From IMG/VR virus record IMGVR_UViG_3300046810_000338, positions 62,001 to 126,000 of that record: DNA of 64,000 nucleotides; one strand, 5' to 3'. Positions 1,536 to 61,684 of this stretch are shown here, piece by piece; within the stretch, counting starts at the first letter, position 1; each line of letters opens with the position of its first letter. A program made the translations under genes and the position numbers. The notes beneath the pieces are model-generated. The model did no database searches and was not told the origin of the DNA. It was given only the letters and a program-made list of their open reading frames with translations.

Positions 1536-1555
1536 AGCCCTCCTTCGGGAGGGCT
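1536..1555 (+). terminator. Stem-loop terminator after chmA and the structured region
   Basis: AGCCCTCC-TTCG-GGAGGGCT, followed by TTACTTATGCC. Confidence 0.8.
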
Positions 1556-1596
1556 TTACTTATGCCCTCACTTACATTTTTTGTTGGAGGATTATC

Positions 1597-3087
1597 GTGG
1601 GATTAGTTGCGTATATTCTTGACCATAAACAGGTCATGGAAGATTTGCCGACCCCTCCTCTTATTGTCAATGACCTGAATTTGGACTTGGGTACCAAAGA
1701 AGGTCGCGATCAGTTGGCACTGTATTTGTCCTGTTCGTTCGAGGGCGATACGATTCCCACTATTCCAAGTTGTTTGGGTGGGCACATTACTGGCGAGCGT
1801 TACCTCGGCCGGTACTGTAAAAAGTGTAACACCAAAGTTACTAACCTGGTTGACCGGGCGATTGACAGTGGTGTTTGGATTGCTCCGCCAACTGGAGTAA
1901 AAGGGTTCATTCACCCAGAAGTGTGGAACGTTCTGTCCCCACGGCTGACGCCGCTCAAGTCGTTCTCCATGCTCAGTTGGATCTGCGATCCGTTCTATCC
2001 GGAAACGCTGGCATCCTTCCAAGGCATTCTGGAAGACTACAAGAGCAAGCATGAACGCGGTATCAACTATTTCATCGATCACTTCGATGAAATCATCGAG
2101 TTCATCATCACTTCCAAACTGTGCCAGAAGTTACCGGCGCAGGATAAAGAAGACATTCGTGAGTTCATCCGTCAAAACCGGGACAAGGTTGTGCAGAAGC
2201 ATCTGCCACTGCCGAGTCAAATCTTTGTGGTCTCTGAAAAGACTGCAATGGGTAACTACGCGGACGACAAAACGACTGCGCTGCTCGATGCGGTTTACAC
2301 GATCACCAGTACCTACAGCACCCCCATTGCTCTGGATCTGAAGCGCCGTCAATCTCACGCTGCTCGTGCTATTGCCGCGCTGGGTATCTGTTACGCCAAC
2401 ATCTGCACCAAGTTCATCGGTGGCAAGTATGGCCTGGTGCGCAGACAGAACATCGGTTCTCGTCTGCACTTTACTGGCCGTGCGGTTATCACATCGTTGA
2501 GCGACGCGCACCACTATGAAGAGTGTCATCTGCCGTGGGCATTCGCTGTGCAGATCTACGAGCCGCACTTGTGTGGTAAGTTGGCACGACGTGGCTTCTC
2601 GACCAACGATGCTCTGGCATTCTTGGAAGACAACACTCTGCAATGGAACCCATTGCTGCGTGAGCTGTTTGATGAGTTGATCAATGAGTCTCCGTTGATC
2701 GAAGGCTTCCCTAACGGAATCTTCGAAGATATCGATGCAGCCGGCAATCAAATGCGTGGCCTGCCGATCATCCTGCAACGTAACCCATCGTTGACTCGTG
2801 GTTCGGCACAACAGCTTTATGTACCTGTGATCAAAGACGACGTGGAAGATTTCACCATTTCCCTGTCGAACAACATCCTGGTTGCATACAACGCCGACTT
2901 TGACGGCGATGAGCTGAATGTCATGGTCATCCTGGACAGGAAGATGTTGAAGTCCATGTCCCGTTTCCGTGCCCACCTCGGTGCCCGCAGTCTGAGAGAG
3001 CCCCGTACTCTTTCCGACAACATGAAAATCCATGCACCAGTGGCGGCCACTTGGGCTCACTACGTGCATCACTCCGAAAAAGGTTAG
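1597..3087 (+). CDS. Non-virion RNA polymerase beta-prime N-terminal subunit (phiKZ gp55-like), uninterrupted
   Basis: Catalytic NADFDGD motif, QRNPSL motif, RLHFTGRAVITS, Zn-finger Cys (CLGGH...YCKKC); GTG start with GGAGG RBS. Confidence 0.95.
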   Translation: MGLVAYILDHKQVMEDLPTPPLIVNDLNLDLGTKEGRDQLALYLSCSFEGDTIPTIPSCLGGHITGERYLGRYCKKCNTKVTNLVDRAIDSGVWIAPPTGVKGFIHPEVWNVLSPRLTPLKSFSMLSWICDPFYPETLASFQGILEDYKSKHERGINYFIDHFDEIIEFIITSKLCQKLPAQDKEDIREFIRQNRDKVVQKHLPLPSQIFVVSEKTAMGNYADDKTTALLDAVYTITSTYSTPIALDLKRRQSHAARAIAALGICYANICTKFIGGKYGLVRRQNIGSRLHFTGRAVITSLSDAHHYEECHLPWAFAVQIYEPHLCGKLARRGFSTNDALAFLEDNTLQWNPLLRELFDELINESPLIEGFPNGIFEDIDAAGNQMRGLPIILQRNPSLTRGSAQQLYVPVIKDDVEDFTISLSNNILVAYNADFDGDELNVMVILDRKMLKSMSRFRAHLGARSLREPRTLSDNMKIHAPVAATWAHYVHHSEKG

Positions 3088-3090
3088 CGT

Positions 3091-3477
3091 ATGTCACTTG
3101 AGAACTACCCCAATCTGCATCACGCGGTGTTGATCCATCATGAAGAAGCAACTGAAAGTCTGGGAGCTGAACTGGCCGATGTAATTGACCAGGAAACTTC
3201 CACAGACTCGCTGATTGATGGTGCTGCAACAGCAGTGCTTGAACAGTTGGCGATGGTTGCAATGGTCAATGCTACAGAGGCACTGCGTACCGGCCGACCC
3301 GGCCCTGATCAGCTTAAAGTCAGACAGGGCCGTGTTAAGGTTATTGAGGGCATTCTGGAAATGGTTGAAGCCTCTGAAGCTTCCGACTATTTCCAAGACG
3401 ACGGTCAGATCAACCCACTGGATCTGATGCGTGAATTTGTGGCTTACAGCCACGCAAAGGAGAAGCAAGATGTCTAG
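3091..3477 (+). CDS. Acidic hypothetical protein, tandem paralog 1
   Basis: 128 aa ORF; N-terminal LxxYxxLH motif shared with the next two ORFs. Confidence 0.8.
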   Translation: MSLENYPNLHHAVLIHHEEATESLGAELADVIDQETSTDSLIDGAATAVLEQLAMVAMVNATEALRTGRPGPDQLKVRQGRVKVIEGILEMVEASEASDYFQDDGQINPLDLMREFVAYSHAKEKQDV

Positions 3478-3877
3478 TTTGCATCGCTATAACAAATTGC
3501 ATAAGTTGGCCCAGAACTTCTCTGGCGAGGGCCTCAACCCTAACGAACACGGGCTTTTCCAAGACCGTGTGGTTCTTGAAGCGACGATGGGTGCCTCTAC
3601 TGCACTCATCGAAGCCATGAAGGACGTTAACGCCGCTGCTGGCGAAACTCCTTTTGTAAATCGTACGCTGCTTAAGGCCGCCGCTATTTTGGCACCGGCC
3701 ATCGCCAGTGTGATTGACGTCTTGAAAGAAGACGCTGTCTGTACGGTCGAAGCCAGTTTGTTCAAGGACTTCGCTGCCGTCACCGGGTATGCCGAGGGCC
3801 TGCGTGAAGTGGTTCCATACGTGGCATCTCTTCCCGATCTGCCACCGCCTGCTCGGCCTGATGGGGTGTCAGAATGA
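3470..3877 (+). CDS. Hypothetical protein, tandem paralog 2
   Basis: Start moved to ATG 3470 (AAGGAG RBS, overlaps previous stop); LKAAAILAPAIASVIDV motif. Confidence 0.8.
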   Translation: MSSLHRYNKLHKLAQNFSGEGLNPNEHGLFQDRVVLEATMGASTALIEAMKDVNAAAGETPFVNRTLLKAAAILAPAIASVIDVLKEDAVCTVEASLFKDFAAVTGYAEGLREVVPYVASLPDLPPPARPDGVSE

Positions 3878-4365
3878 GCCGTCTGTCTAAATACGTTCAC
3901 CTCCACAAAGCCGTTACTTTCGGTGAGGAGTTGCATCTCGAAGAACTGGATGAAAATCCATTGCTCGAACCGATTCTGGTAGTATCGGCTGTCGGTGCCA
4001 TGACTGAAATGGCTGGCGGCATGATGCTCGACCAGTTCGCCCCTCCTGGCTCAACGCCCCCATCCGTTGACTACATGGCCAACTCGCTGGAAATGGCTCT
4101 GCGTGCTTCGGCCATTTTGGCTCCGGCAGTGGCAGATGTTATCGAGCTGTATCGCAACACTGACGCCTTCAACGAATGCTTCACTGAAGCTGACATGAAG
4201 GCCGATACTTGCCTGGCAGCACTGCGTCAGGTTCCTGAGTATGCAGCGGATAACCCAACCGTCGATCCCCAGATGGTTGAGACGTTCCAGCGGGCAGAAG
4301 AGGTCGAGGCTGCAAAGGTCCTGGCCCGCCTCAAAAAGGTAGAACAGATCCACACTCCCGATTAA
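3874..4365 (+). CDS. Acidic hypothetical protein, tandem paralog 3
   Basis: ATGA overlap with previous stop; LRASAILAPAVADVIEL motif. Confidence 0.8.
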   Translation: MSRLSKYVHLHKAVTFGEELHLEELDENPLLEPILVVSAVGAMTEMAGGMMLDQFAPPGSTPPSVDYMANSLEMALRASAILAPAVADVIELYRNTDAFNECFTEADMKADTCLAALRQVPEYAADNPTVDPQMVETFQRAEEVEAAKVLARLKKVEQIHTPD

Positions 4366-4377
4366 CAAAGGTGCACC

Positions 4378-5004
4378 ATGCAAATTATCTACGGTGGTGA
4401 TGATGTCGTATCGGAACTGATGTACGGTTCTCGATCCGATAACCTGATTCAAGAGTTGCGAAATAATCTCAACTTCAAGAATCCGCTACTCACCGAACAG
4501 GGTAAGGCGTACGCTGCAAGGGCAAATCAGGTATTTGAACAAGTATCTGGTTGGGATGTTGTGCGTGCAGCCCGTAAGGCTGTTAGCGCTATCTCTGGAT
4601 ATATCCGTAACGACCAAATCACCTTCTTTGATACGCTGGAACAGATTCAGACAGCGCCTCCGAAGATGCAGCGGTTCGTCATGGCTAGCTTGGAAATTCG
4701 TAAGAGCTACCAAGCAGGTCTTCTGAACGGATATAGCGAAAGCTATGTTGATATCCAACCCGGCATGATTGGCCATGATCACTACGACTACCGTGTGGCT
4801 TCCCACGGTATCGTTCAGACCACGGTCACTGATGAAGGTACTCCCCAGTACGAAGTTACTCAGTGGAAAATGGAGCTGGCTAAATGGGATGAGAAATTGT
4901 CTCAGAACAACCGGCTCGATCTGGCACGGACTTTCTCTGTTGCACATGCTGCACTCATTGCAATGATGGAAGATCCAACCAGCCGCTACGGTGATAAGTT
5001 GTAA
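4378..5004 (+). CDS. Conserved phiKZ-like core protein (probably gp59/Imp3-like)
   Basis: 208 aa, AAGGTG RBS, IYGG and YDYR motifs. Family assignment rests on synteny and recall only. Confidence 0.55.
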   Translation: MQIIYGGDDVVSELMYGSRSDNLIQELRNNLNFKNPLLTEQGKAYAARANQVFEQVSGWDVVRAARKAVSAISGYIRNDQITFFDTLEQIQTAPPKMQRFVMASLEIRKSYQAGLLNGYSESYVDIQPGMIGHDHYDYRVASHGIVQTTVTDEGTPQYEVTQWKMELAKWDEKLSQNNRLDLARTFSVAHAALIAMMEDPTSRYGDKL

Positions 5005-5010
5005 CTGATC

Positions 5011-5034
5011 TGGGGGCGGCTTCGGTCGCCCCCA
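5011..5034 (+). terminator. Stem-loop terminator
   Basis: TGGGGGCGGC-TTCG-GTCGCCCCCA, then TTTCTATG and a T-run. Confidence 0.8.
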
Positions 5035-5074
5035 TTTCTATGTGCTGCTTATTTTTTTGTCTGAGGGTTTCATC

Positions 5075-5503
5075 ATGGCTACTGGATACCCATCTCTTAC
5101 TGCTGAGGGTTTTATCTTTGCGGTCGATCGCAAGTGTGACCGGATTCTGATGAGCATGTTTGCAAGTGATGCTGGTCAATCGAACATGTTTGCAGGGTCT
5201 GTTACCAGTATTCAAAACATCATTTACCTGAACAGTGATGATGTCAATGCTGCTGGCACTGCTGTGGCCGCTGGCATTGAGCGCGTGCTGTCCCGATACT
5301 TTGATGGAGCCAACGTTCAAGGCGTCGTCACGGACATCGTAGACAAGCCTGGGCGAGTGGACATCAGTATTCAAGGCAGCGTTGTTCAGAACAACCGCCG
5401 CTATGACTTCGGTCGTATGCTGGAATCTGCCAACGGCATGATCCAGTCCATCATGAACAATCAAGGGGAAGTATTGTGGACGAACGTGCTGACGTACTCT
5501 TAG
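5075..5503 (+). CDS. Conserved virion/baseplate-associated protein (phiKZ gp62-like)
   Basis: ATG 5075 with GAGGG RBS; PSLTAEGFI and SDAGQSNMFAGSVTSIQ segments; synteny. Confidence 0.6.
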   Translation: MATGYPSLTAEGFIFAVDRKCDRILMSMFASDAGQSNMFAGSVTSIQNIIYLNSDDVNAAGTAVAAGIERVLSRYFDGANVQGVVTDIVDKPGRVDISIQGSVVQNNRRYDFGRMLESANGMIQSIMNNQGEVLWTNVLTYS

Positions 5504-5937
5504 TAGAAGATGTCCTTTCCAAGGTGGCCAGCGAGTATGGATTGGATGAGGTTATGGTTCGCGCCGTTGCAGCCACCGAGTCTTCTGGCGCTGTCAGTCT
5601 TTTCGATGACATTGTCGAATCAGTCCGAGACGCGGCAATTGAGCATGGGAAAGAGCACGGCCCTGTTCGAACAATCATCATCATAGGCAGCGACAACCAC
5701 TCTGCCCAACTTAAGGCTGCGTTGCAAGTCATTGGCTGTGACGTACTCGTCATGACCGAGGCAGAGGCCGTTACGTCGGAATACGGTAACGCCATGGTTG
5801 TGGCCAGCCGCCCCTCAGGCCCACGACCTGTTCAAGAGTTGTCAGAGCGCTGGTGGTTGCCTCCCCGTAAATCGAAAGGCGAAAAGAAACGTGAGCGCGC
5901 TTTTAATCGCAGGCTCTATGGACGAGGAAACTGGTAA
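5476..5937 (+). CDS. Hypothetical protein with basic C-terminal tail
   Basis: GTG start after AGGGGAAG; 153 aa; ends in a K/R-rich stretch. Confidence 0.7.
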   Translation: MDERADVLLVEDVLSKVASEYGLDEVMVRAVAATESSGAVSLFDDIVESVRDAAIEHGKEHGPVRTIIIIGSDNHSAQLKAALQVIGCDVLVMTEAEAVTSEYGNAMVVASRPSGPRPVQELSERWWLPPRKSKGEKKRERAFNRRLYGRGNW

Positions 5938-6584
5938 TGGCTGAAGAAGAGAAAAAACCCGAACTGTCTGTCGCAGAGCGGGCCGATGCAATGCCTAAGG
6001 GTCTTTCCTACGCTATCCGGGAAAGCATCGCTACCCTGCAAGTGTTGCAGGAAACTGACAAGGCCCGTGTGCACGAAGCTATCTTTGTGCGCGACGTGTT
6101 ACCTGTTCTGTGCGGTGACGAAGGTCAAACGGTTGACATGGCCTGGTGGGGTGGTCGTTTCGATAGCCCGTTCAAAGGCTTCCTCATTGTTAACGACGAC
6201 AATGAAGTGCTCTTTGAAGTACCGCCCTTGCTCGATCGTAACTTCGATCTAGTGCCGGCCAGACATGCACGGGACTCGATCAACGAGGACCGAGCCAACT
6301 ACACCAAGCGGGTTTATAACCGCCCAGGCGATGCTAAGGCCGAATACGCCGAAGCCATGCGTCGTCGTCTGGACTTGACCAAGACAGGTCGTCCACTGCA
6401 ACACATGCACATGCTCGACAAGATCTTCATTCACTACGGTCGTCCTTCTATCTTTGAGCAGGACTCGCGTGAGACGATTAAATTGGCCGTGGAATCTTCC
6501 GGTCTGAAAGTCGCTCCCACTGAGGCACCTGCGACTCAGGTCTTTAGCGAGGAGAATTACAGTGAAGAAGGGCTTCTCGATTGA
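5937..6584 (+). CDS. Conserved hypothetical protein
   Basis: 215 aa, TAATG coupling, GAGGA RBS; VLFEVPPLL segment. Confidence 0.75.
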   Translation: MAEEEKKPELSVAERADAMPKGLSYAIRESIATLQVLQETDKARVHEAIFVRDVLPVLCGDEGQTVDMAWWGGRFDSPFKGFLIVNDDNEVLFEVPPLLDRNFDLVPARHARDSINEDRANYTKRVYNRPGDAKAEYAEAMRRRLDLTKTGRPLQHMHMLDKIFIHYGRPSIFEQDSRETIKLAVESSGLKVAPTEAPATQVFSEENYSEEGLLD

Positions 6585-7695
6585 AATCGCTAGCATAAGC
6601 GATGTGCACTTGGGGCATACTCGAACACCTACGCAGTTGATCACAGAGAACTTGGACATTGCCTTTCCAGACAATGCCCAGTTCGCTAAGTTGGACATGA
6701 TCTTCATCGATGGTGATTTTTTTGATCGATTGCTCCAGGTGCCAGAAGACGATGCGTATATCGCTCGTCGTTGGATACATCGCTTTCTGTTGCGCTGCGA
6801 GAAACATGACGTTGCCCTGGCCGTACTTGAAGGCACGCCTCGTCATGACCGTCGTCAATCGAAGATGTTCCAGGAAGTTATTGATTTAACAGGAGTTAAG
6901 GTCGATTTTCGTTACGTGGACAGTTTGTCTATCGAGTACATTGAGCGCTTTGATATCCATGTGCTTTATGTCCCCGATGAATGGCGGCATGACCCTAACG
7001 AAACGTTTGCCGAAGTACAGGCACTGATGGCGGCAAAGATGCTGACTCAGGTCGACTTTGCCAGCATGCACGGTTGCTTTGAATATCAGTTGCCCGACGT
7101 AGGTAACGCCAGGCAAAAGGCGCATCAATCGGCTAACTACCTGCCGCTGGTGAGACACCAGATCTTCATCGGACACCACCATGTGTTTAGCGAGTATGAA
7201 CACATTGTTGCTCAAGGATCTTTCGATCGATTGATCCATGGCGAGGAGGCCCCCAAAGGCCACGTACGCCTCTCAATCAAGGATGGGGCAAAGACCCTTA
7301 CCTTCGTTGAGAACAAAGGTGCTATGGACTACAGGACGCTCTCAGTGTCAGGTATGTCGGTAGAGGAAGTGTTGGTGATGATAGCGGCTCTCAAACTGCG
7401 TCCTGATTCCAGGATTCGTTTGACAGGTGCCGTTTCCGACATGGGCATTCGAATGCTCAGGCACATCCGCCGGGACTTCCCTGAGTACAAGATCATTAGC
7501 GAAGTGGACAAGGTCGTAGGAGGCAAGCTTGAAGCACCTACGGTTGCGCGTCACTACGTCCCGATACAGATCGGCCCAGCCAATGTCATTGGCATGGCCA
7601 GGGACTGGATGGTCAGAGATGGCGCTAACGATCACGAGATCAAGTATTGCGAGGAAATCATACATGAGCAAATCAGTTCGGGCATTGGCCGGTAG
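6562..7695 (+). CDS. sbcD: SbcD/Mre11-like metallophosphoesterase nuclease (phiKZ gp65-like)
   Basis: Calcineurin-like motifs SDVHLG, GDFFD, GTPRHD, MHG, GHHH, QGSFDRL. Confidence 0.88.
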   Translation: MKKGFSIEIASISDVHLGHTRTPTQLITENLDIAFPDNAQFAKLDMIFIDGDFFDRLLQVPEDDAYIARRWIHRFLLRCEKHDVALAVLEGTPRHDRRQSKMFQEVIDLTGVKVDFRYVDSLSIEYIERFDIHVLYVPDEWRHDPNETFAEVQALMAAKMLTQVDFASMHGCFEYQLPDVGNARQKAHQSANYLPLVRHQIFIGHHHVFSEYEHIVAQGSFDRLIHGEEAPKGHVRLSIKDGAKTLTFVENKGAMDYRTLSVSGMSVEEVLVMIAALKLRPDSRIRLTGAVSDMGIRMLRHIRRDFPEYKIISEVDKVVGGKLEAPTVARHYVPIQIGPANVIGMARDWMVRDGANDHEIKYCEEIIHEQISSGIGR

Positions 7696-8527: not shown

Positions 8528-8596
8528 AACAGAACTGACTCGCCGTATTGTCTGAAGAGAAATGCCCCCACATTTACTGTTAGGAAGGAGTCCAGC

Positions 8597-9319: not shown

Positions 9320-9343
9320 GCTACAAAAAAAAAAGCATGTAAA

Positions 9344-9380
9344 CATAAAAAGACGGGCCCATCAGGGCCCGGCTTTTATG
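9344..9380. terminator. Bidirectional stem-loop with CATA/TATG arms
   Basis: CATAAAA...GGGCCC-ATCA-GGGCCC...TTTTATG; A10 run upstream. Confidence 0.75.
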
Positions 9381-9410
9381 ACCTAGGTACTTGTAATAAG
9401 GAAATTTGAA

Positions 9411-9429
9411 ACCTAAATTATCTACGTGA
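9411..9429 (+). promoter_or_regulatory. Phage promoter-like motif copy 1 (ACCTAAATTATCTACGTGA)
   Basis: 18/19 identical to 56353-56371; upstream of the nvRNAP gp68-like gene. Confidence 0.65.
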
Positions 9430-9480
9430 GCGCATCGAAAGATTCGTTCTGCTTACTACGCTTCAGGGAGTTGTAACGAC

Positions 9481-11004: not shown

Positions 11005-11029
11005 GCAATCAATTTAAGGAGTGCTACAA

Positions 11030-12598: not shown

Positions 12599-12613
12599 TC
12601 CATGGGGGATCAA

Positions 12614-13997: not shown

Positions 13998-14040
13998 GGC
14001 ATAAACCCTCTCCCCTTTGGGGGAGAGGGGCTTTTATACG
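13998..14040. terminator. Bidirectional terminator between convergent genes
   Basis: GGCATAA-CCCTCTCCCC-TTTG-GGGGAGAGGG-GCTTTTATAC. Confidence 0.8.
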
Positions 14041-21324: not shown

Positions 21325-21330
21325 TGCATA

Positions 21331-21370
21331 CAGCCTCCCTCGCCTAAGCGAGGGAGGCTGGGCTTATGCC
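21331..21370. terminator. Bidirectional terminator
   Basis: 13 bp stem CAGCCTCCCTCGC-CTAA-GCGAGGGAGGCTG, then GGCTTATGCC and T9GT. Confidence 0.85.
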
Positions 21371-21390
21371 GAGTGTTTCTTTTTTTTTGT

Positions 21391-26885: not shown

Positions 26886-26933
26886 GGCATACTCTCCCTC
26901 TTCCCCTAAAGGAAGAGGGAGAGGGCTTATGCC
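26886..26933. terminator. Bidirectional terminator
   Basis: GGCATA-CTCTCCCTCTTCC...GGAAGAGGGAGAG-GGCTTATGCC; overlaps the polymerase stop codon. Confidence 0.85.
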
Positions 26934-35567: not shown

Positions 35568-35576
35568 CCCATAACC

Positions 35577-35596
35577 GCCCCTCCTTCGGGAGGGGC
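35577..35596 (+). terminator. Stem-loop terminator
   Basis: GCCCCTCC-TTCG-GGAGGGGC. Confidence 0.75.
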
Positions 35597-36936: not shown

Positions 36937-36982
36937 GGCATACTCCCACTCCTTCTTTAGGGAAGGAGTGGGAGGCTTATGC
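36937..36982. terminator. Bidirectional terminator
   Basis: GGCATA-CTCCCACTCCTTC...GAAGGAGTGGGAG-GCTTATGC. Confidence 0.85.
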
Positions 36983-39919
36983 TTACTTCTGACTGCGTGC
37001 TGGCAAGTGCGGAGTGAAAACGATGTCGATGTCTTCTTCCACGGTGTACGTGTTGTCTGGTAGAGAGGTCAGTTTCTTACGGATAGAGAGGCGACCGTTA
37101 CCATCTGTCAGGGTTACCAACGGATAGTTGTAGATGCCACCCAGACCCGTAATCTCCAGACCCAATACATCGGCACCAGATTGTTCACGGACAGCCGTGG
37201 AGATATCCACGATGGCTACGCTGCTGCTTGCAAACTTGTCTGCGATGATACTGATGATGGTTTTACGAATGTTGGTTTTAAGGTCATCATTCTTGAACCC
37301 TACCTCTGTCATCAATACCAACACTTTGAGGGACTGCTCGGCGTAGATAGTAACATCAGCGCCTTCACCCACTACTGCATCCAGCTGACCGGTTGTGGCC
37401 AGTGGTTTGAAGTAGATGCTGGATTTCTCCAGAGCCTTCTCGTTGGTAGCCCCCATGTCCGTAGTTGCCCACGTAACCATGTTGGTGCAGATTTGTTGCA
37501 TGTAGTTGATAGACGATGCGTCGTTGGCAAAGTAGTACCGGCCATCAAACAACGTAAGGTCAATCTGGCGAGCCAACTGTCGAGGGTTCTTGAGAACCTT
37601 CTCACCGTTAACCAACACCAAGTCGCCTTTACGGTACTTGTACTGCGGGGAACCATCTGCCAAGAAGATCTGATCGCCTGCATTGTGCAACACGGTGTTG
37701 TGCAGCTCACCGTCGTCACCCAACGTAATCAACATGCCACCTGTCACCGGGTCTTCCACGTAGGTCGTTTCGGTGTAGTAGTCAAACTGGTCATCGGCGT
37801 ACAACTCGTAGTCGGCTGGCGTACCGACGGTACGACTGCCTGCCCACAGATACTTCAGTGGGCTGCCCAGAGAGATCGTAACCCGCTCGTGCAGTACCCC
37901 AATGGAATCGTAGGGCAGCATGTTGCGGTTTTTGAGCTCGTCAATTGGACCAGGCTTCATGTTCGGTGCGGTATACGCGGACACCAAGTAGATGATGTCA
38001 AACGTCGGTGCCAAACCGATCGGGTGATTCAGCGGGCCATCCCCAAACATCGAGAAGTTCAACAGCGTCAACGAGTCGTTAGAATCGATGTCGTAGTTGG
38101 TGACCAGGTTGAATTCCCAAACACGCTCACCCGACTCCTTAGTCAGGATAATGCCGTTCAGGTAAGCCATGTCCGACTCGCCCGGAGGCGTGTAGGCCAA
38201 TTGCACTTCTACCTGATCATCTTCCAAGCCTTGATACAGCGTTTGACTGCTGGTCTTGACGTGGATCAGATAACCGTTAGCTACCCGAGACACCACGATG
38301 GCAGAGGCGGCCTGCAAGTCCAACTGCACGCTAGGGTTAGCCTGCACAAATTGGCGAGCCGTTACCTGAGGGGCATCCAGGTAATAGATCCGCATAGCGA
38401 ATCCATCATTGGTTGCATCGAGTACGTTGTGGAAAGGAGAGAAGCGATAATCTGCCTCACTGATAGCCCGAGCAGTGGCCTCAGGTTTAAGCAGGAACAG
38501 ATCGGACTTCTCAGCTTCCGACACGATCTCAACGCCGCCATCCAAGTCACGGTACAGAATCGATGGATGCAGGGTAACGCGGTCGCCGTTGTGGCTGGTG
38601 CCTGCCAACCCATTCAGATCAGCCAGACGCAAGGACATGCTCTCTGTCGCCGTGGAGATTGGCGTCAGGGTGTACTTGTCCAAAGGCACTGGCATAACAC
38701 GGGTTGCGTTGAACACACGCTTGGTGATCGCATCCACGTCCACCACAGAGTCATAGCCGTCATCAGCCAGAGCCTGTTCACGGTTAACGTTGGTGATCGG
38801 CAGATTGATCGGACCCAAGTTGAAGTTGGTCACACGCTCGCGCACTTGTTCCAACGTCAGTGCTGCACGGCCCCCGCTGGTGTAGCCATCGGAGTACGCG
38901 CGGTACGTGGAGATCTTCATGAAAGGAGCGGTGTACAACCCATTGTCATCATTGTCCAGATCTTCCCACACCACACTCCATGCTTTGGAGTCAAAGTCAG
39001 TCAAGATCTTGTCATTGACGGCTTTGGTGGTGTAGATGTCAATGCGCAGCTCACCACTGATCAGGCCCAGCGTTTGATAGACTATCGGTACACGGACCGA
39101 CATCACACCAGAACCCACTTGCAGAAGCACCGTAGCCACCGATGGATTGAAGACCTGATCAGTGTGCGTGGTTGCCACTTCTTTCCAAGACGTCACAGCA
39201 CCATTCGTTACCCGCACATAGGCTCGGGCATAATGGAACTGGTCGGTGAAACTCAGCGTGGTGTTGAACACCCCCGCCGCGTTAGTCTGGAAGATTTGAC
39301 TGGTGATCGTCATCTGCGGAACAGTGGTCTGCAAACGAATGAAGCTGGTGCCACCGTAGTCGATCACATCGTAGTTAATGATGTTGCTCGCAATGGTGTG
39401 CAGTGCGCCATTGGGTGAAGTGCCGTACACCACAGACAACCCGCCGTTTACCGCAAAGGTAAACTCGATTGGGTATTCGAAGGTGAAAGTGGTGTTGTCC
39501 ACTGTGAACGAAGAGTTCTTAGGCATTACCAACTTACGCACGCCACCTGGTGTCACTTCTACGGCATAGCTGCGCACTTCCTCCAACGCCACCATCAAAC
39601 CGATAGGCGCCATAGAAGGCTCTGCAAAGATCCCCAGGTACGCTCTGTCGGCCATGTGCAGGTAGAGGTCTTCCATGGTCAGCGCAAGGCTTGCATAGCG
39701 CTTACGGGTCAGGACCTCCATGCCGATCATGTTGCCAGCGCCCACAGCGATCATGGCTTCGAACAGAAACATCGCAGGGTTGGTAGGGTCACAGTAACGA
39801 ATGTCCCCATCCATCACCTCTTCCATCTTGTTGAGGATGTCGCGCTGCTGGCCCATCGGGTCAAAGCGTGCCCAGTCCATTGCCTCAATGATCTCATCGC
39901 TGGTCAGTAGCGAACTCAT
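36983..39919 (-). CDS. Baseplate wedge-like structural protein (phiKZ gp87-like)
   Basis: 978 aa; DPTNPAMFLFE, LYLHMAD, GGRAALTLEQVRERV baseplate-J-like segment; synteny. Confidence 0.75.
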   Translation of the reverse strand: MSSLLTSDEIIEAMDWARFDPMGQQRDILNKMEEVMDGDIRYCDPTNPAMFLFEAMIAVGAGNMIGMEVLTRKRYASLALTMEDLYLHMADRAYLGIFAEPSMAPIGLMVALEEVRSYAVEVTPGGVRKLVMPKNSSFTVDNTTFTFEYPIEFTFAVNGGLSVVYGTSPNGALHTIASNIINYDVIDYGGTSFIRLQTTVPQMTITSQIFQTNAAGVFNTTLSFTDQFHYARAYVRVTNGAVTSWKEVATTHTDQVFNPSVATVLLQVGSGVMSVRVPIVYQTLGLISGELRIDIYTTKAVNDKILTDFDSKAWSVVWEDLDNDDNGLYTAPFMKISTYRAYSDGYTSGGRAALTLEQVRERVTNFNLGPINLPITNVNREQALADDGYDSVVDVDAITKRVFNATRVMPVPLDKYTLTPISTATESMSLRLADLNGLAGTSHNGDRVTLHPSILYRDLDGGVEIVSEAEKSDLFLLKPEATARAISEADYRFSPFHNVLDATNDGFAMRIYYLDAPQVTARQFVQANPSVQLDLQAASAIVVSRVANGYLIHVKTSSQTLYQGLEDDQVEVQLAYTPPGESDMAYLNGIILTKESGERVWEFNLVTNYDIDSNDSLTLLNFSMFGDGPLNHPIGLAPTFDIIYLVSAYTAPNMKPGPIDELKNRNMLPYDSIGVLHERVTISLGSPLKYLWAGSRTVGTPADYELYADDQFDYYTETTYVEDPVTGGMLITLGDDGELHNTVLHNAGDQIFLADGSPQYKYRKGDLVLVNGEKVLKNPRQLARQIDLTLFDGRYYFANDASSINYMQQICTNMVTWATTDMGATNEKALEKSSIYFKPLATTGQLDAVVGEGADVTIYAEQSLKVLVLMTEVGFKNDDLKTNIRKTIISIIADKFASSSVAIVDISTAVREQSGADVLGLEITGLGGIYNYPLVTLTDGNGRLSIRKKLTSLPDNTYTVEEDIDIVFTPHLPARSQK

Positions 39920-45176: not shown

Positions 45177-45204
45177 TTCTTGCCGGCCTGAGCCAGGTGC
45201 ATAA

Positions 45205-45238
45205 ATAAAAGCCGGGGCATTGCCCCGGCTTTTATGCC
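45205..45238 (+). terminator. Stem-loop terminator
   Basis: 14 bp stem ATAAAAGCCGGGGC-ATT-GCCCCGGCTTTTAT-GCC. Confidence 0.85.
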
Positions 45239-45283
45239 GTGTCATGGTATGACCAGTTAGATTTGTATCCCAAGGACATCATC

Positions 45284-50203: not shown

Positions 50204-50251
50204 CCATAGCCGCTCTCTAGAGGCCCTTAGAGGCCTCTAGAGAGCTTATGG
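50204..50251 (+). terminator. Stem-loop terminator
   Basis: CCATA..GCTCTCTAGAGGC...GCCTCTAGAGAGC-TTATGG. Confidence 0.8.
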
Positions 50252-50268
50252 GAATAAGTTATTTACAG

Positions 50269-51325: not shown

Positions 51326-51438
51326 CCCTCGTCCCTCTTCGGAGGGGCGAGGGTTTTATGCCTACCCTTTATTTTTTTGTTTGACGGCATAAGTAAAGCT
51401 CACTCTCCGGTCATGTAGACACAAGGAGAGTGAGCTTT
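51326..51438. terminator. Back-to-back terminators of convergent genes
   Basis: Plus strand: CCCTCGTCCCTC-TTCG-GAGGGGCGAGGG then TTATGCC. Minus strand: 14 bp stem 51395-51408/51425-51438 then TTATGCC. Confidence 0.82.
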
Positions 51439-51449
51439 GTGGGGTCGAC

Positions 51450-56010: not shown

Positions 56011-56051
56011 ATAAGCCCGGAGCTTCGGCTCCGGGCTTATGCCCTTATGCC
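56011..56051. terminator. Terminator after capsid gene
   Basis: 13 bp stem ATAAGCCCGGAGC-TTCG-GCTCCGGGCTTAT; TTATGCC twice in tandem. Confidence 0.88.
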
Positions 56052-56320
56052 GTCTTATTGAAAAGGCGGTCATGGAAAACGATGGCCAGTACCATTCCAA
56101 TAGCGGCCCCTGTGCCAGAGCTGAGGGTCATCCACCAGCCGCCCTTATAGATCACCATTACCGCAGCTACATCGAACACAGCCATCGCATAGGACGTCAC
56201 AGCGATGAGTTTCAAATGACCCCCGATCACGTTCTTGTGTTGAAAGCCTTTAAGGAAGACAGAGCAGAATGTTACCAAAGTGCTGATAGCGTACAACTCT
56301 AAACCTGGTTGTTCCAACAT
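56045..56320 (-). CDS. Small multi-pass membrane protein
   Basis: 91 aa, three hydrophobic helices, CAGGAG RBS. Confidence 0.75.
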   Translation of the reverse strand: MLEQPGLELYAISTLVTFCSVFLKGFQHKNVIGGHLKLIAVTSYAMAVFDVAAVMVIYKGGWWMTLSSGTGAAIGMVLAIVFHDRLFNKTA

Positions 56321-56352
56321 GTAAGTCTCCTGCTGGTTTAAAAGAATTACAC

Positions 56353-56371
56353 ACCTAAATTATCTAAGTGA
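56353..56371 (+). promoter_or_regulatory. Promoter-like motif copy 4 (ACCTAAATTATCTAAGTGA)
   Basis: 18/19 identical to 9411-9429; upstream of the operon carrying nvRNAP beta N. Confidence 0.65.
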
Positions 56372-56497
56372 TCTGAATCCAGTGATGGCTTCGATCTTTG
56401 AGTTCGGTCCTTGCCTAGCAGCTAACCCTGCATTCCCCTAGTTGAGGATTTAGGACTTGTTAATATAAATCGATACGGCGATACATGGAGCGTTGTA

Positions 56498-57665: not shown

Positions 57666-59282
57666 ATGAACAGCCAAATGTTAGGTATCATTGCCAAGCG
57701 CATCGAACCTTTCAATCCGGATATCGCCAACGGCATTGCGCTCAAGCAGGTACCTACTGCTGAGAACTATGTTGACCGTGACTTCCGCGCTTCGTCAGAT
57801 CAGTTCCCACCCGACGTCAAGTACCTCGGGCTGCGTCGCTGCACTGCAATGGAAGAGTACAAACTGCTGCATCAAAAGAAGGAGAAGAACTATGTAGAAC
57901 TGAGTCGTACAGACATGACACTGTACGAGGCGCAATTCACGTATCAAGATCGGCCGATGGAGTCTCGTTACTTCTACCTGCCGTTCGCCATCGAAGCGGG
58001 CATGATGCACGTTCGTGGCACCGAGTACATGCTGTCGCCTGTCATCGGTGACGTTGCTGTAAGTGTGACTCGTGGTGGTCTGTTCGCATGGTTGGGCCTG
58101 ACTAAGGTGCAGTTCTATCGGATGAACTATCAGATGTACGTTGACGGTACCAGTTATAGTGGCTCTGTAGCGCACTCTAACCTCTATCACCGCTCAAGTA
58201 AGTCCAAGGCTGCAAAGGTGGGCAAGAACAGTTTGCGCTCAACCTTGGTACACTACATGCTTTGTCGCATGGGGTTGACCGAAATGATGACCAAGCACTT
58301 CGGTTGTTCGAGTGTCCTGATTGGGGACGCGAGTACAATCAATCATGATGTACTGGATCTGGACGAATGGACCATTTGTTCAAGTTCGGGGATGGGTGGT
58401 AAACCCGTACGCGGTGAATACTTTCGCAGCGGTCTACGGGTAGCTATTCCAAGTGCAGCGATTACAGCAGATATGCTGGACGCGCTCACAGGTGTGTTCT
58501 ATGTCATCGATACCTATCCAGATCAGGTTCAGTTGGAGTATCTGGAAAATCCTCAGATGTGGCAGCGTCTGATGGGTCGGGTTATCTTTGGCGATACAAT
58601 GAACGAGGGCGAGCGCATGATTCTTCTGCGTGAGCACCTTATCTCGATTGATGGTTACGTCAATTACCAATCGAGGCGTACGTTGCATCAAGGCAAGATT
58701 ATGGTAGAAACCATCCACGAGTTCTTTGCGTGGGTGATTCGTGAAATGCCTTTCTTGATTTCCACTGCCCCTACTGAAGTCGCTAGCCTGTATGGCAAGC
58801 GCCTGATGATTGTGCGATACCTGCTTAAAGACATCAGTCGGTCAATCTACTTGCTGATGTTCAGACTGCGGGCCCAGTACAACAAGAAGGGTCGGTTGAG
58901 CGAGAAGGAAGTTCGCGATGCCATGCGTAAAGGTCTGCTGCGCGACCGTATTACTGTGGTCAACGTTAACCATGCCGAGGTAAGCACTGTCAGTTCCCCA
59001 GGGGACAACAAGATCTTCAAGATCACCTCGACAGCTGTACTGCAAGAAAACACCGACAGCCCACGCGGCAAAGGTGGTGGCGGTTCTCTGAATGATCCGT
59101 CCAAGTTCCTGCACAGTTCGGTTATCGAATTCTGTAGCTACTGCGCCATGGGTAAGAACGAGCCCACTGGACGTGGTAAGCTCGGGACCAATGTTCGTAC
59201 GAACGCAAGGGGAGACTTGCTTCGTAACGAGAAACATCACAATCTACTTGAATACACGCAGCAGCTTCTAACACGCAAGTGA
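57666..59282 (+). CDS. Non-virion RNAP beta N-terminal subunit (phiKZ gp123-like)
   Basis: FNPDIANGIA, RYFYLPF, EYMLSPV, SSPGDNKIFKIT, LHSSVIE, EPTGRGKL. Confidence 0.9.
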   Translation: MNSQMLGIIAKRIEPFNPDIANGIALKQVPTAENYVDRDFRASSDQFPPDVKYLGLRRCTAMEEYKLLHQKKEKNYVELSRTDMTLYEAQFTYQDRPMESRYFYLPFAIEAGMMHVRGTEYMLSPVIGDVAVSVTRGGLFAWLGLTKVQFYRMNYQMYVDGTSYSGSVAHSNLYHRSSKSKAAKVGKNSLRSTLVHYMLCRMGLTEMMTKHFGCSSVLIGDASTINHDVLDLDEWTICSSSGMGGKPVRGEYFRSGLRVAIPSAAITADMLDALTGVFYVIDTYPDQVQLEYLENPQMWQRLMGRVIFGDTMNEGERMILLREHLISIDGYVNYQSRRTLHQGKIMVETIHEFFAWVIREMPFLISTAPTEVASLYGKRLMIVRYLLKDISRSIYLLMFRLRAQYNKKGRLSEKEVRDAMRKGLLRDRITVVNVNHAEVSTVSSPGDNKIFKITSTAVLQENTDSPRGKGGGGSLNDPSKFLHSSVIEFCSYCAMGKNEPTGRGKLGTNVRTNARGDLLRNEKHHNLLEYTQQLLTRK

Positions 59283-59311
59283 TTAGATTTGCTATTTGAA
59301 AGGACAGAATC

Positions 59312-61543
59312 ATGCATCAACAAGCGCTGCCGTTTCCCGTCGAGGGTCCGGTAAACGGCCACTGGATTGAAAACCCGTTCAATGTGCAACTGCCTATCCC
59401 GGCGGTGCCATTTGCACAGACCAACCCTCAGCTGCTTTGGGTGGTCGCTACAACTGCTGCGATTCTGGTCAACCAGTTGCAAGACAACTGCCGCGGTGGT
59501 CCGGTCTCGATCTTTGCGTACAACCTGTTCAGCCACAACTTCTACAACAACCAATACTTCGCAGCCATCGTTACCGACGGCTCCGAGTTCGCTTTGCAGC
59601 AACTGCAAATCATGCAGCAAGGCAGTGATCCTCAAGCGGTCGTTGGCAAGGCTGTGCAGTTCTATTGCGGTTATGCAGTTGCTGCCTGTGCCACCAAGTT
59701 TGATCTGAGCCCGTATCTGACTCAGGACATGGTGAACCGCATCAACCACACGCTTCAACAGTGGAAGAACATTCAGGCACCGCAGCAACAGCAACAAGCC
59801 TACGGCGTCCCAACTGGTCAGATTCCAGGGGCAGCCCGCGGTGCTTACGGTGCAGCAGACCCGGCGCAGTACGCTTCAGCCAATGTTGGTATCTCTACCA
59901 CAGCAGGGATTGGCGCACTCGCCTACAACCCTGCCTCGGTGCAGGACAACAGTAAGTTCGGAGCAGCCGCAATGCAAGATACCCGCCCCCGTCCGGATAG
60001 CGCAAATACCCCTGAGCCAGAATTGCAGGCTCTGGGTGTCGTTGAATCTTCCGGCATCGGTCAACCTCGTGCCATTCCTCAAGCCCGCGTTACTGTTGAA
60101 CGTGATGTCTCGGGCGTCATTCCGCAGTCTCAGCCAGTGGGCGTAACTGTCAGCTCCTCTATTCCTGAAGTGTCGGTGCTGGGCAACGACGACTTCAACG
60201 AGGAGTGGATGAGCAAGGTCAAGTTCGACAACGATGTCGATCGCAAGCCTGATTCCGAGTACCACATCCCTGACACTGTCACGGGTCGTTTCCTGTTCCG
60301 TCCGATGCATGTCGAGGTTAATCTGCCGACTACATTGGAAGAAGCAGAACTGGAAGAGCCTGAAGACCTCGTTACGCTCGATATCGAGTCGTTGGTTAAC
60401 GGCGATGACGACTGGTCGATCCTCAAGCTCAAGAACGGCTCTACGGCGGCGATGACGACCAGCAAAGATACTGGCCGTACCTGGACCATGGAACAACCCC
60501 ACGACCATCCTTACAACCCGCAGAGCCACTTCCGCTATTTGGTCAGCGAGGAAGACTCTGCCGACCACTGCTATGAAGCGTTCATGGCTCGGGAAAAAGA
60601 AGTGGACTACCTCGATCTGGAGTTTAATGAATCCAAACGGGCAGCGGCGCGTCAGGTAATGTTGGCCGGGCAAAACATCATGCCCGATCTCAGCGTCCTG
60701 CACTCCATTGTTCCACGCGGTGTTCCTTACACCATCATCAATGCCCTCGCTGATCTGGACAAGGCAGAATCTTCCGCTAACGCAGAAGACCATCTCGCTG
60801 AGCTGGAAAAGTTCCAGGGCAAGCTGAACTTCTTCGAGCGCCATAAAGGCCCTCAAGAGATGCACGCGGTTATCACCAAGATCGAGCAGTTCCAGCAACG
60901 TGTCCGAGCCCGCAACGCTGTAGCCGCAACCTGTGGCTACTTCATCCGCAGCTTTGTGGCGGAAGAAATGGTCAAGCGGGTTAACGCAATTAACTCAGCC
61001 TCCATCGACAAGCGTGTTGCAATCGTTCTGTTGATGGGCGATGAACTGCTCAAATGCAATCCACGAGCTTATCTGTACCTCAGCACCGAACTGACCAAAG
61101 TGGTCAACCAGGCGCTGTCGGCAATGCTCGGTATCACCACCTTCGAGATCACTGATTTCTTCGTTGATTACTTTGATCTCTGTAACGAAGTTAGCACGAG
61201 CTTCTCTGACGAGGTGTTCAAGCAATTTGGCCTGGCCATGTCGGCCGCGCTGGACTCGTTCAGCTTCGGCATGGACGGTAGCATGTTGACGGTGCGCCAG
61301 TCGTATCGTCTGATTGGTTTGCCGATGGCCCTGGCCAGCTTTGACCTGCCAAGTACGAATGGGGATTCGTACAAGGTATTGAGCAGTCTTGCTCCTGAGC
61401 TGTACACGATCATCCGGGCGTTGATTCAAGACCCCGAGACCACCAAAGGTGCTCGCACCTACATGCACACCGTCTCCGGCGAGACGTTTGAAGTCGTTGA
61501 GTCCATTTGGGATGAAGGCTATCTGACTCTGCTGCGTAGCTGA
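59312..61543 (+). CDS. Conserved hypothetical protein with Q/A/G-rich linker
   Basis: 743 aa, AAGGA RBS; low-complexity region around residues 150-280. Confidence 0.72.
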   Translation: MHQQALPFPVEGPVNGHWIENPFNVQLPIPAVPFAQTNPQLLWVVATTAAILVNQLQDNCRGGPVSIFAYNLFSHNFYNNQYFAAIVTDGSEFALQQLQIMQQGSDPQAVVGKAVQFYCGYAVAACATKFDLSPYLTQDMVNRINHTLQQWKNIQAPQQQQQAYGVPTGQIPGAARGAYGAADPAQYASANVGISTTAGIGALAYNPASVQDNSKFGAAAMQDTRPRPDSANTPEPELQALGVVESSGIGQPRAIPQARVTVERDVSGVIPQSQPVGVTVSSSIPEVSVLGNDDFNEEWMSKVKFDNDVDRKPDSEYHIPDTVTGRFLFRPMHVEVNLPTTLEEAELEEPEDLVTLDIESLVNGDDDWSILKLKNGSTAAMTTSKDTGRTWTMEQPHDHPYNPQSHFRYLVSEEDSADHCYEAFMAREKEVDYLDLEFNESKRAAARQVMLAGQNIMPDLSVLHSIVPRGVPYTIINALADLDKAESSANAEDHLAELEKFQGKLNFFERHKGPQEMHAVITKIEQFQQRVRARNAVAATCGYFIRSFVAEEMVKRVNAINSASIDKRVAIVLLMGDELLKCNPRAYLYLSTELTKVVNQALSAMLGITTFEITDFFVDYFDLCNEVSTSFSDEVFKQFGLAMSAALDSFSFGMDGSMLTVRQSYRLIGLPMALASFDLPSTNGDSYKVLSSLAPELYTIIRALIQDPETTKGARTYMHTVSGETFEVVESIWDEGYLTLLRS

Positions 61544-61626
61544 ACGATTCACTAACCAACTCTGCACCCGCAGGTAAATCCACTAGACAACCCCGGCTGA
61601 TTACAAAGAGTGCTGAATAAGCGCAT

Positions 61627-61670
61627 AGACTCCAGGCCCACCGGGGGCCTGGAGTCTGCTTTCACTTATG
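61627..61670. terminator. Bidirectional terminator
   Basis: 13 bp stem AGACTCCAGGCCC-ACCGG-GGGCCTGGAGTCT, GCATA before, CACTTATG and T-run after. Confidence 0.82.
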
Positions 61671-61684
61671 TTTATTTTTTTGTA

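What the first reader, a model, noticed from the sequence alone, without database searches (positions are those of the whole stretch)
1536..61680. Recurring CATA-hairpin-TTATGCC-(T-run)GT cassette at operon boundaries
About a dozen strong hairpins are followed within a few bases by TTATG, often TTATGCC: 1560, 9377, 21364, 26927, 36977, 45232, 50246, 51356, 56037, 61666, plus CTATG at 5038. Many have the mirror (GG)CATA on the left arm (13998, 21326, 26886, 36937, 50204, 61623). Several have a T-run plus GT 10-20 nt further on rather than directly after the stem (1577, 5052, 21380, 51372, 61675, and 9323 on the minus strand). That is not a classical intrinsic terminator layout. phiKZ late promoters are known to reduce to TATG at the start site. 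Inference: a combined terminator/late-promoter or processing module, in which an extruded hairpin may supply the specificity a 4 nt consensus lacks. Copies between convergent genes would fire antisense transcripts.
Basis: partly seen in the sequence, partly recalled or inferred. Interest (0 to 1): 0.62.

Follow-up and report, generated by a model that had tools for sequence, protein, structure and literature searches.

The report
phiKZ-type transcription terminators, many bidirectional
The recurring hairpin-plus-TTATGCC cassettes are real. They are this uncultured jumbo phage's version of the stem-loop + TTAT terminator motif already mapped by RNA sequencing in phages phiKZ and 201phi2-1, and the evidence does not support a combined terminator/late-promoter.

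Summary
The window lies in a 228.5-kb phiKZ-like (chimallivirus) genome from a rhizosphere metagenome. Genome-wide, 40 of 60 strong intergenic hairpins have TATG within 8 nt of the stem. Chance is about 5% per strand, and only 1 of 64 hairpins inside genes has it.

The flank consensus is yTTATGCC(G)T. This matches the published phiKZ terminator motif (stem-loop, then BYTTATKYYGT).

The cassette marks gene 3' ends:
- 20 of 26 convergent junctions hold a strong hairpin, usually with CATA on the left and TATG on the right, so it reads as a terminator on both strands.
- 38 of 208 tandem junctions hold one.
- 0 of 25 divergent junctions hold the cassette.

Three related metagenomic genomes keep the cassettes at orthologous junctions. 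The stems differ and covary, while the flanks stay the same.

The best-studied phiKZ late promoter, P119L, has no upstream hairpin. TATG is at least as frequent where no gene follows. The promoter reading is therefore not supported, though it is not excluded at tandem junctions.

The T-run+GT is also real. It begins 13-19 nt past the stem and is kept at convergent junctions. Its role is unresolved; I favour a second, oligo-U stop.

No RNA data exist for this phage. Verdict: a new member of a known kind, of modest interest.

The parts
1536..1584 (+). Unidirectional cassette. Hairpin 1536-1555 (extended pairing 1532-1559), TTATGCC 1560-1566, T6+GT 1577-1584. It lies between the nuclear-shell gene (ends 1262) and the RNAP beta'-like gene (starts 1597).
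   Evidence: the TACTTATGCCCTCA block is identical in G001 and G002
5011..5060 (+). Unidirectional cassette. Hairpin 5011-5034, CTATG 5038-5042, T7+GT 5052-5060, then RBS and ATG at 5075.
   Evidence: orthologues in G001/G002 have changed stems, TTTTATG and T10
9323..9380 (.). Two-sided cassette at a tandem junction. Minus-strand T10+GT (9334-9323), CATA 9344-9347, hairpin 9354-9371 (extended 9348-9377), TATG 9377-9380. An early-promoter-like motif follows at 9405-9430.
   Evidence: orthologues have different stems, with TTTATG and the promoter motif kept
13998..14039 (.). Convergent-junction hairpin 14006-14029. GGCATAAA on the left (13998-14005) gives TTTATGCC on the minus strand. The right flank is GCTTTTATAC, which has no TATG.
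21326..21390 (.). Bidirectional cassette between convergent genes. GCATA 21326-21330, hairpin 21331-21360, TTATGCC 21364-21370, T9+GT 21380-21390, abutting the stop of the minus gene at 21391.
   Evidence: the G001 orthologue has an unrelated stem but keeps CATAG, CTATG and T9GT
26886..26933 (.). Bidirectional cassette. GGCATA 26886-26891, hairpin 26892-26923, TTATGCC 26927-26933. The TTA of the motif is the stop codon of the minus-strand DNA polymerase gene.
35569..35596 (.). Hairpin 35577-35596 after the 1218-aa gene. There is no TATG on the sense side. CCATAACC on the left gives TTATGG on the minus strand.
36937..36983 (.). Bidirectional cassette. GGCATA 36937-36942, hairpin 36943-36974, TTATGCT 36977-36983.
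   Evidence: orthologues in G001-G003 have a wholly different GC stem flanked by CATAC and TATGCCGT
45199..45239 (.). Two-sided cassette after the internal-head-protein gene. GCATAA 45199-45204, hairpin 45205-45235 (core 45212-45228), TATGCC 45233-45238.
   Evidence: 4 of 20 pairs show compensatory changes across 4 genomes
50204..50252 (.). Two-sided cassette. CCATAG 50204-50209, hairpin 50212-50245, TTATGGG 50246-50252. An early-promoter-like motif follows at 50263-50290.
   Evidence: orthologues have a changed stem plus TTATGCCGT
51326..51380 (+). Plus-strand cassette of a face-to-face pair. Hairpin 51326-51353, TTTTATGCC 51354-51362, T7+GT 51372-51380.
51386..51443 (-). Minus-strand cassette of the pair, after the DnaB-like helicase gene. 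Hairpin 51396-51439 with a large loop; GGCATAAGT 51386-51394 reads ACTTATGCCGT on the minus strand.
56011..56052 (+). Cassette directly after the major capsid gene (ends 55988). Hairpin 56011-56040 (core 56015-56036), doubled TTATGCC at 56037-56051.
   Evidence: 7 of 14 pairs show compensatory changes across 4 genomes; TTTATGCC is kept
61623..61683 (.). Bidirectional cassette. GCATAG 61623-61628, hairpin 61627-61657, TTATG 61666-61670, T7+GT 61675-61683, abutting the stop of the minus-strand virion protein gene at 61685.
   Evidence: hairpin, TATG and T-run are kept in G001, G002 and G003

Best explanation
The cassettes are factor-independent transcription terminators of the phiKZ type, used by the phage's own multisubunit RNA polymerases.

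Each is a GC-rich RNA hairpin that begins 3-13 nt after a stop codon. The stem sequence is free to vary. It is followed within 0-4 nt by a fixed sequence, yTTATGCC(G)T, which stands in for the usual U-tract.

Between convergent genes a single hairpin serves both strands. That is why CATA appears on the left as the mirror of TATG on the right.

What is shown:
- position and orientation relative to genes;
- conservation with stem covariation;
- identity of the flank with the motif at experimentally mapped phiKZ terminators.

What is inferred:
- The polymerase pauses at U(-1)/G(+1) of UUAUG, with the weak UUAU stretch nearest the hairpin, and releases the RNA around the GCC.
- The non-template-strand TATG pocket of the beta-like subunit may help this pause. 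Eight of its 14 residues are identical here.
- The T6-10+G run 13-19 nt further on is a second, oligo-U pause or stop for polymerases that read through.
For: 1. Enrichment. 40 of 60 strong intergenic hairpins carry TATG, against 1 of 64 in genes and 5% by chance.

2. Position. Strong hairpins lie at 20 of 26 convergent, 38 of 208 tandem and 1 of 25 divergent junctions, and the divergent one lacks TATG. At tandem junctions TATG is commoner on the sense side (21 of 38) than the antisense side (10 of 38).

3. Motif. The consensus in three genomes is yT-TATG-C-C-(G)-T. This equals the published phiKZ terminator motif, stem-loop + BYTTATKYYGT, found at 61 RNA-mapped terminators (PMC10914365). It also equals motif A of 201phi2-1, which has 15 bidirectional terminators (PMC11512511).

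4. Other phages. My own scan of phiKZ shows TATG beside 31-37% of hairpin sides against 6-7% by chance. In Xanthomonas phage Xoo-sp14 it is 22% against 1.4%, including the T9-10 run.

5. Conservation. Orthologous junctions in G001-G003 keep the hairpin, flanks and T-run while the stems change. At the capsid-gene terminator 7 of 14 pairs are compensatory.

6. Polymerases. The genome encodes the phiKZ-like split RNAP subunits, including a gp123 homologue at 57666-59282.
Against: - No RNA 3' ends exist for this phage. No listed sequencing run is on record as RNA.
- The flank is not U-rich, and the tool's classical terminator scan of 1-20000 found no excess (18 against 16.6 expected). Termination therefore rests on analogy with phiKZ.
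- About a third of strong intergenic hairpins lack TATG.
- A quarter of tandem-junction hairpins carry an antisense CATA with no obvious transcript to stop.
- The distal T-run has no established mechanism.
- Outside hairpin flanks TATG is not enriched upstream of genes (33 sense, 27 antisense, about 48 expected). If this phage uses TATG promoters, they leave no footprint outside the cassettes.
Confidence: 0.8

Rival explanations
1. The cassette is a combined terminator and late promoter: nvRNAP starts at the G of the TATG just past the hairpin, and the (extruded) hairpin supplies the specificity that a 4-nt motif lacks.
For: - TATG with G at +1 is the phiKZ late-promoter core, read by a pocket in gp123. 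Eight of the 14 pocket residues are identical in the window's homologue.
- At some tandem junctions the TATG lies 36-51 nt before the next start codon (1561, 5039, 45233). That is close to the typical phiKZ 5' UTR of 31-40 nt.
- Hairpin-free TATG is not enriched upstream of genes.
Against: - The cassette is absent from all 25 divergent junctions and present at most convergent ones, on both sides.
- TATG frequency is not lower where no gene follows.
- P119L has no hairpin and fires from linear DNA.
- The published late-promoter logos report no conservation besides TATG. GC-rich stems would have shown up in the AT-rich phiKZ genome.
- The capsid gene's upstream region has no TATG conserved across five relatives.
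- Separate promoter-like motifs follow two of the cassettes.
Confidence: 0.1
2. The cassettes are RNA processing or stability elements. The hairpins are 3' stem-loops that block exonucleases, and UUAUG marks an endonuclease cut, so the 3' ends arise by processing rather than termination.
For: Position just after stop codons and structure conservation would fit a stabilising 3' stem-loop equally well. The phiKZ papers report some processed RNAs.
Against: - The sequence-specific flank is conserved from a 37% GC phage to 58% GC phages with different hosts. That points to the phage's own conserved machinery rather than host nucleases.
- 201phi2-1 terminators of this class stopped transcription in a two-reporter terminator trap.
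- The two roles are not exclusive.
Confidence: 0.07
3. The cassettes are DNA-level palindromes: binding sites for a dimeric protein, cruciforms, or REP-like mobile repeats.
For: The inverted GGCATA / TATGCC arms around a palindrome look like a dimer site.
Against: - The stems are all different and covary. This selects for pairing, not for a sequence, so they are not copies of a mobile element.
- Many cassettes are one-sided and oriented with the upstream gene.
- The spacers on the two sides are unequal.
Confidence: 0.03

Closest known systems
phiKZ intrinsic terminator motif (Putzeys et al. 2024, Microlife, PMC10914365) and 201phi2-1 terminator motif A (PMC11512511)
   Same: - GC-rich stem-loop, with a pyrimidine-rich 5' arm and purine-rich 3' arm in 16 of 20 convergent cases.
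- Followed by YTTAT-G/T-YY-GT.
- Intergenic position after genes.
- Bidirectional copies between convergent genes.
- Left-hand mirror that lengthens the stem, which resembles the 201phi2-1 motif A+B combination reported to elongate the hairpin (my inference).
- Host phage with two phiKZ-like multisubunit RNAPs.
   Different: - The host genome is 53% GC, and its capsid protein is only about 25-34% identical to those of cultured chimalliviruses.
- The fifth flank position is almost always G, and CC follows, giving TTATGCC.
- A discrete T6-10+GT run 13-19 nt past the stem stands out here; the two papers' text does not mention it.
- No RNA 3' ends are available here.
phiKZ late promoter, 5'-TATG-3' with G at +1 (Yakunina et al. 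2015, PMC4666361; gp123 pocket, PMC12809450)
   Same: The same four bases occur. A homologue of the subunit that reads them is encoded in the window, with 8 of 14 pocket residues identical.
   Different: Late promoters lie upstream of late genes and need no hairpin; P119L has none. Here the TATG is tied to the 3' side of hairpins, sits at gene ends including convergent junctions, and is extended to TTATGCCGT.
Classical bacterial intrinsic and bidirectional terminators (hairpin + U-tract; A-tract/U-tract symmetry)
   Same: A stable hairpin lies just after the gene. A symmetric left flank makes the element work on both strands.
   Different: There is no adjacent run of U. The weak UUAU is followed by GCC. 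Where an oligo-T run is present, it is displaced by 13-19 nt.
Oligo-T termination of RNA polymerase III and archaeal RNAP, including the proposal that an upstream RNA hairpin helps release after backtracking from the U-run (recalled from memory: Nielsen, Yuzenkova and Zenkin 2013; disputed)
   Same: A hairpin is followed at a distance by a run of T on the non-template strand.
   Different: The polymerases are unrelated, and nothing was tested here. This is offered only as a precedent for the distal T-run.

Membership tests
phiKZ-type terminator motif | Stable GC-rich stem-loop of CCYCCC...GGGRGG type | tested here: met
   Hairpins of -12 to -32 kcal/mol. 16 of 20 convergent-junction hairpins have a pyrimidine-rich 5' arm and none a purine-rich one. 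At tandem junctions the arms are mixed, 10 against 7.
phiKZ-type terminator motif | Stem followed within a few nt by YTTAT-K-YY-GT | tested here: met
   The consensus is yT-TATG-C-C-(G)-T in G000, G001 and G002. The stem-to-TATG distance is mostly 0-4 nt.
phiKZ-type terminator motif | Lies after genes; bidirectional copies between convergent genes | tested here: met
   Hairpins start 3-13 nt after stop codons. They occur at 20 of 26 convergent and 0 of 25 divergent junctions, and 12 of 20 convergent hairpins have TATG on both sides.
phiKZ-type terminator motif | Encoded by a phage with phiKZ-like virion and non-virion multisubunit RNAPs | tested here: met
   PHROG hits to RNAP beta/beta' fragments at 1597, 14534, 16676 and 21943(-). 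The gp123 homologue is at 57666. Nuclear shell protein and phiKZ synteny are present.
phiKZ-type terminator motif | Coincides with transcript 3' ends during infection | not testable with these tools
   No listed public run is on record as RNA; the best holder is a rhizosphere metagenome.
phiKZ late promoter | TATG placed upstream of, and pointing into, a late gene | tested here: not met
   30 of 40 convergent-junction sides carry TATG pointing into the 3' end of an opposing gene. None of the 25 divergent junctions has the cassette.
phiKZ late promoter | Primary (5'-triphosphate) transcripts start at the G | not testable with these tools
   No RNA data. The phiKZ TSS and TTS tables are not held.
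   phiKZ P119L (L014 about 7590-7620) lies in a divergent region, is AT-rich and has no hairpin. It is active on PCR fragments.
Classical intrinsic terminator | At least 5 T in the 8 nt directly after the stem | tested here: not met
   The scan of 1-20000 finds 18 sites against 16.6 expected from shuffles. Most cassettes have TTATGCC instead. Where a T-run is present it begins 13-19 nt away.

The most novel reading that the evidence does not exclude
The hairpin-adjacent TATG may be read during elongation by the same non-template-strand pocket of the nvRNAP beta-like subunit that reads TATG at late promoters. One pocket would then serve both start and stop. It would cause a sequence-specific pause that lets a hairpin terminate without a U-tract. 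At tandem junctions it might also let the released enzyme restart at the same G. The oligo-T run 13-19 nt downstream would act as a second stop. The papers I could read do not discuss the overlap between the terminator motif and the promoter core.
Probability: 0.2. Interest if true: 0.65.

Novelty: new member of a known kind. Interest (0 to 1): 0.3.

Why it matters
For annotation, the rule (hairpin + yTTATGCCGT, optionally T6-10 about 17 nt on) marks transcription-unit ends in an uncultured chimallivirus clade. It shows that the phiKZ terminator grammar persists across genomes of 37-58% GC whose capsid proteins share only about 25-34% identity with this phage's. That degree of conservation argues that the phage polymerases read the flank sequence itself. 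This sharpens a testable question: do the terminator TTATG and the late-promoter TATG use the same protein pocket? Beyond that the finding is ordinary, because the element class is already described.

Tried and rejected
- RNA evidence.
- Rfam scan of the window: no family.
- Megablast of a window gene against phage records: no near relative.
- The phiKZ and 201phi2-1 TSS/TTS supplementary tables are not held, and Ceyssens 2014 is not held. I therefore could not intersect late start sites with terminators.
- Whether T-runs are specifically avoided on the sense strand of genes, as a hairpin-independent stop signal would predict. All four homopolymers are equally depleted, so the test is uninformative.
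- Whether TATG-less hairpins mark early operons and TATG hairpins mark late ones. There is no clean partition by distance to the early-promoter-like motif (inspection).
- TATAG as an alternative late-promoter core. It is enriched tenfold in upstream DNA, but equally on both strands. It is left as a lead.
- The large protein searches, structure prediction and complex prediction were not needed.

Full report
**What the window is.** The 64-kb window is bases 62001-126000 of a 228,499-bp virus record, 53% GC and estimated 82% complete. It encodes:
- split multisubunit RNA polymerase fragments;
- a nuclear shell protein;
- a phiKZ-type major capsid protein;
- a DnaB-like helicase;
- a homologue of phiKZ gp123.

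These lie in the same order as phiKZ gp54-55 and gp118-123. It is therefore a chimallivirus. The best-matching public run is a rhizosphere metagenome. No listed run is on record as RNA. Cultured relatives are distant: capsid identity is at most 33.5%, to Xanthomonas phage Xoo-sp14. Three metagenomic relatives with 65-74% capsid identity were fetched. One of them, G001, is a complete 231,724-bp genome with terminal repeats.

I called genes on the whole genome with a simple codon-usage model and searched for stems of at least 8 bp. There are 324, against about 100 in shuffled genomes. Of these, 124 are at or below -12 kcal/mol, and about 60 of those are intergenic. Forty of the 60 have TATG within 8 nt of the stem on one strand or the other, against 1 of 64 inside genes. 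A random intergenic 14-mer contains TATG 5% of the time (binomial p about 5e-26). The complete relative G001 gives 36 of 44.

**Where the cassettes lie.** This is the decisive result.
- Hairpins begin 3-13 nt after a stop codon.
- By my gene calls the genome has 208 tandem, 26 convergent and 25 divergent junctions.
- A strong hairpin lies at 20 of the 26 convergent junctions, at 38 of the 208 tandem junctions and at 1 of the 25 divergent ones. The divergent one has no TATG.
- At convergent junctions one hairpin is usually flanked by (GG)CATA(A) on the left and (T)TATG(CC) on the right. Thirty of 40 sides carry TATG, and 12 of 20 hairpins carry it on both sides.
- The left-hand CATA is therefore the other strand's TATG, and the element reads as hairpin-then-TATG in the direction of each gene that ends there.
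- At tandem junctions TATG is commoner on the sense side (21 of 38) than on the antisense side (10 of 38).
- G001 shows the same picture: hairpins at 20 of 24 convergent junctions and 0 of 23 divergent ones.

An element that marks 3' ends and is missing from every 5'-5' junction is a terminator, not a promoter.

**The flank is a known motif.** Aligned on TATG, the consensus in three genomes is yT-TATG-C-C-(G)-T. Putzeys et al. (2024) mapped 133 termination regions in phiKZ by ONT-cappable-seq. They report that 61 share a stem-loop followed by TTAT, written BCCYCCCCHWWDGGGRRGGBYTTATKYYGT, and that six regions between convergent genes are bidirectional. The 201phi2-1 study found the same motif in 59 terminators and 15 bidirectional terminators. 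It also found a second motif that lengthens the stem, and it showed activity of eight terminators in a reporter trap. The window's TTATGCCGT fits YTTATKYYGT base for base.

My own scans support this:
- In phiKZ, TATG sits next to 31-37% of hairpin sides, against 6-7% by chance.
- In Xoo-sp14 (58% GC) the figure is 22% against 1.4%, with TATGCCG and T9-10 runs laid out as in the window.
- A 50-kb piece of phage Goslar has few hairpins and only one such site.

**Conservation.** At orthologous junctions in G001-G003 the cassette is kept while the stem changes.
- Behind the capsid gene, 7 of 14 pairs show compensatory double changes and only one pair has a non-canonical member.
- At 36943 and 21331 the stems are unrelated in sequence, yet CATA, TATGCC(GT) and the T-run remain.

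Selection thus acts on pairing plus a fixed 3' flank, as expected for an RNA hairpin read by a sequence-sensitive polymerase.

**The promoter idea.** TATG with G at +1 is indeed the phiKZ late-promoter core. It is necessary but not sufficient, and it is bound on the non-template strand by a pocket in gp123. The window's gp123 homologue (57666-59282) keeps 8 of the 14 named pocket residues at about 25% overall identity. It also has aromatic-for-aromatic changes at two more (H185Y, Y406F).

Five points argue against the promoter reading:
- P119L lies in a divergent region, is AT-rich, has no hairpin and works on linear PCR fragments. A hairpin is therefore not what gives TATG its specificity there.
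- TATG is at least as frequent where no gene follows.
- Two cassettes (9377, 50247) are followed 20-30 nt later by a separate, strongly conserved motif, tttcAGACCTAnATTATCtAaGTG. This motif has about 22 intergenic copies, all on the plus strand and all 40-145 nt before a plus-strand gene. It looks like this phage's early promoter.
- The capsid gene's upstream region has no TATG conserved in five relatives.
- Conserved blocks in 5' regions centre on GGCTATA / TATAGC instead.

Two facts keep the idea alive for tandem junctions. Hairpin-free TATG is not enriched upstream of genes (33 sense, 27 antisense, about 48 expected). And at 1561, 5039 and 45233 the TATG lies 36-51 nt before the next start codon, near the usual phiKZ 5' UTR length. 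I put the dual-function reading at about 0.1.

**The T-run.**
- Of 24 intergenic T>=6 runs, 18 lie 7-21 nt past a strong hairpin, 12 of them at 16-19 nt, and 14 are followed by GT.
- In G001 and G002 the offsets are 13-19 nt.
- The run occurs with or without TATG. In two thirds of cases (16 of 24) its start is 39-56 nt from the upstream stop codon, while its distance to the next gene varies.
- At the convergent junctions 21380 and 61675 it is kept in three or four genomes although no plus-strand gene follows.

So it belongs to the 3'-end module. I favour a second, oligo-U pause or stop, but this is inference. The alternative is a T-rich upstream promoter element, as described for phiKZ early promoters. 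That fits the three cases where the AGACCTA motif follows directly. A test for avoidance of sense-strand T-runs in genes was uninformative.

**Mechanism.**
- Shown: position, orientation, conservation, and identity with a motif that marks mapped 3' ends in two cultured relatives.
- Inferred: the hairpin forms as the polymerase reaches UUAUGCC. The weak UUAU lies next to the stem, and U(-1)/G(+1) with a purine-rich 3' arm about 10 nt upstream resembles the general pause consensus of multisubunit RNAPs (from memory). Release would occur around GCC.
- Not yet addressed: whether the gp123-type pocket takes part. The papers I could read do not mention the overlap of the two motifs.

**Limits.**
- Gene calls are my own and approximate.
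- There are no RNA data for this phage.

Noticed in passing
window 9405-9430, 14425-14450, 50263-50290, 56347-56372: A strongly conserved motif, tttcAGACCTAnATTATCtAaGTG. There are about 22 intergenic copies in the genome, all on the plus strand, 40-145 nt before plus-strand genes. It also occurs at divergent junctions and is kept in G001/G002. It is probably this clade's early (virion RNAP) promoter.
   Followed up: partly
window 53551-53678: The region upstream of the major capsid gene has no TATG conserved in five relatives. It does have invariant blocks ACAGGTAT..TATAGCGAA and GTTAGTCGACTAACACAAACG (alignment A1).
   Followed up: partly
window 24018-24196: This divergent region has blocks conserved in four genomes: GTTATATAG, ATATAGCGG, and on the minus strand CCGCTATAT. 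The minus-strand GCTATATGCTATTG resembles phiKZ P119L GCTATATTGCTATG. GGCTATA / TATAGC blocks recur in other 5' regions and may be the middle or late promoter element.
   Followed up: partly
window 9323-9380: A two-sided cassette with a T10+GT run on the minus strand sits at a tandem plus-plus junction. By my gene calls no minus-strand gene ends there.
   Followed up: no
window 56037-56051: TTATGCC is doubled (TTATGCCCTTATGCC) after the capsid-gene hairpin. The same doubling is present in the G002 orthologue.
   Followed up: no
window 52996-52998: The start codons of the minus-strand helicase gene and the plus-strand gp119-like gene overlap (CATG). The junction that holds P119L in phiKZ therefore has no intergenic DNA here.
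   Followed up: no
G000:C1:214000-218000 (outside the window): A run of small plus-strand genes downstream of two early-promoter-like motifs. Each gene is followed by a hairpin with TTATAC or no motif instead of TATG, and then by ttctaaggaga RBS regions.
   Followed up: no
whole genome G000 versus G001: G000 has 324 stems of 8 bp or more. G001 has 168 and shuffles have about 100. The excess lies inside coding regions.
   Followed up: no
window 1275-1298: A second hairpin lies directly after the nuclear-shell gene stop, without TATG. It is 234 nt upstream of the TTATGCC cassette at 1536.
   Followed up: no
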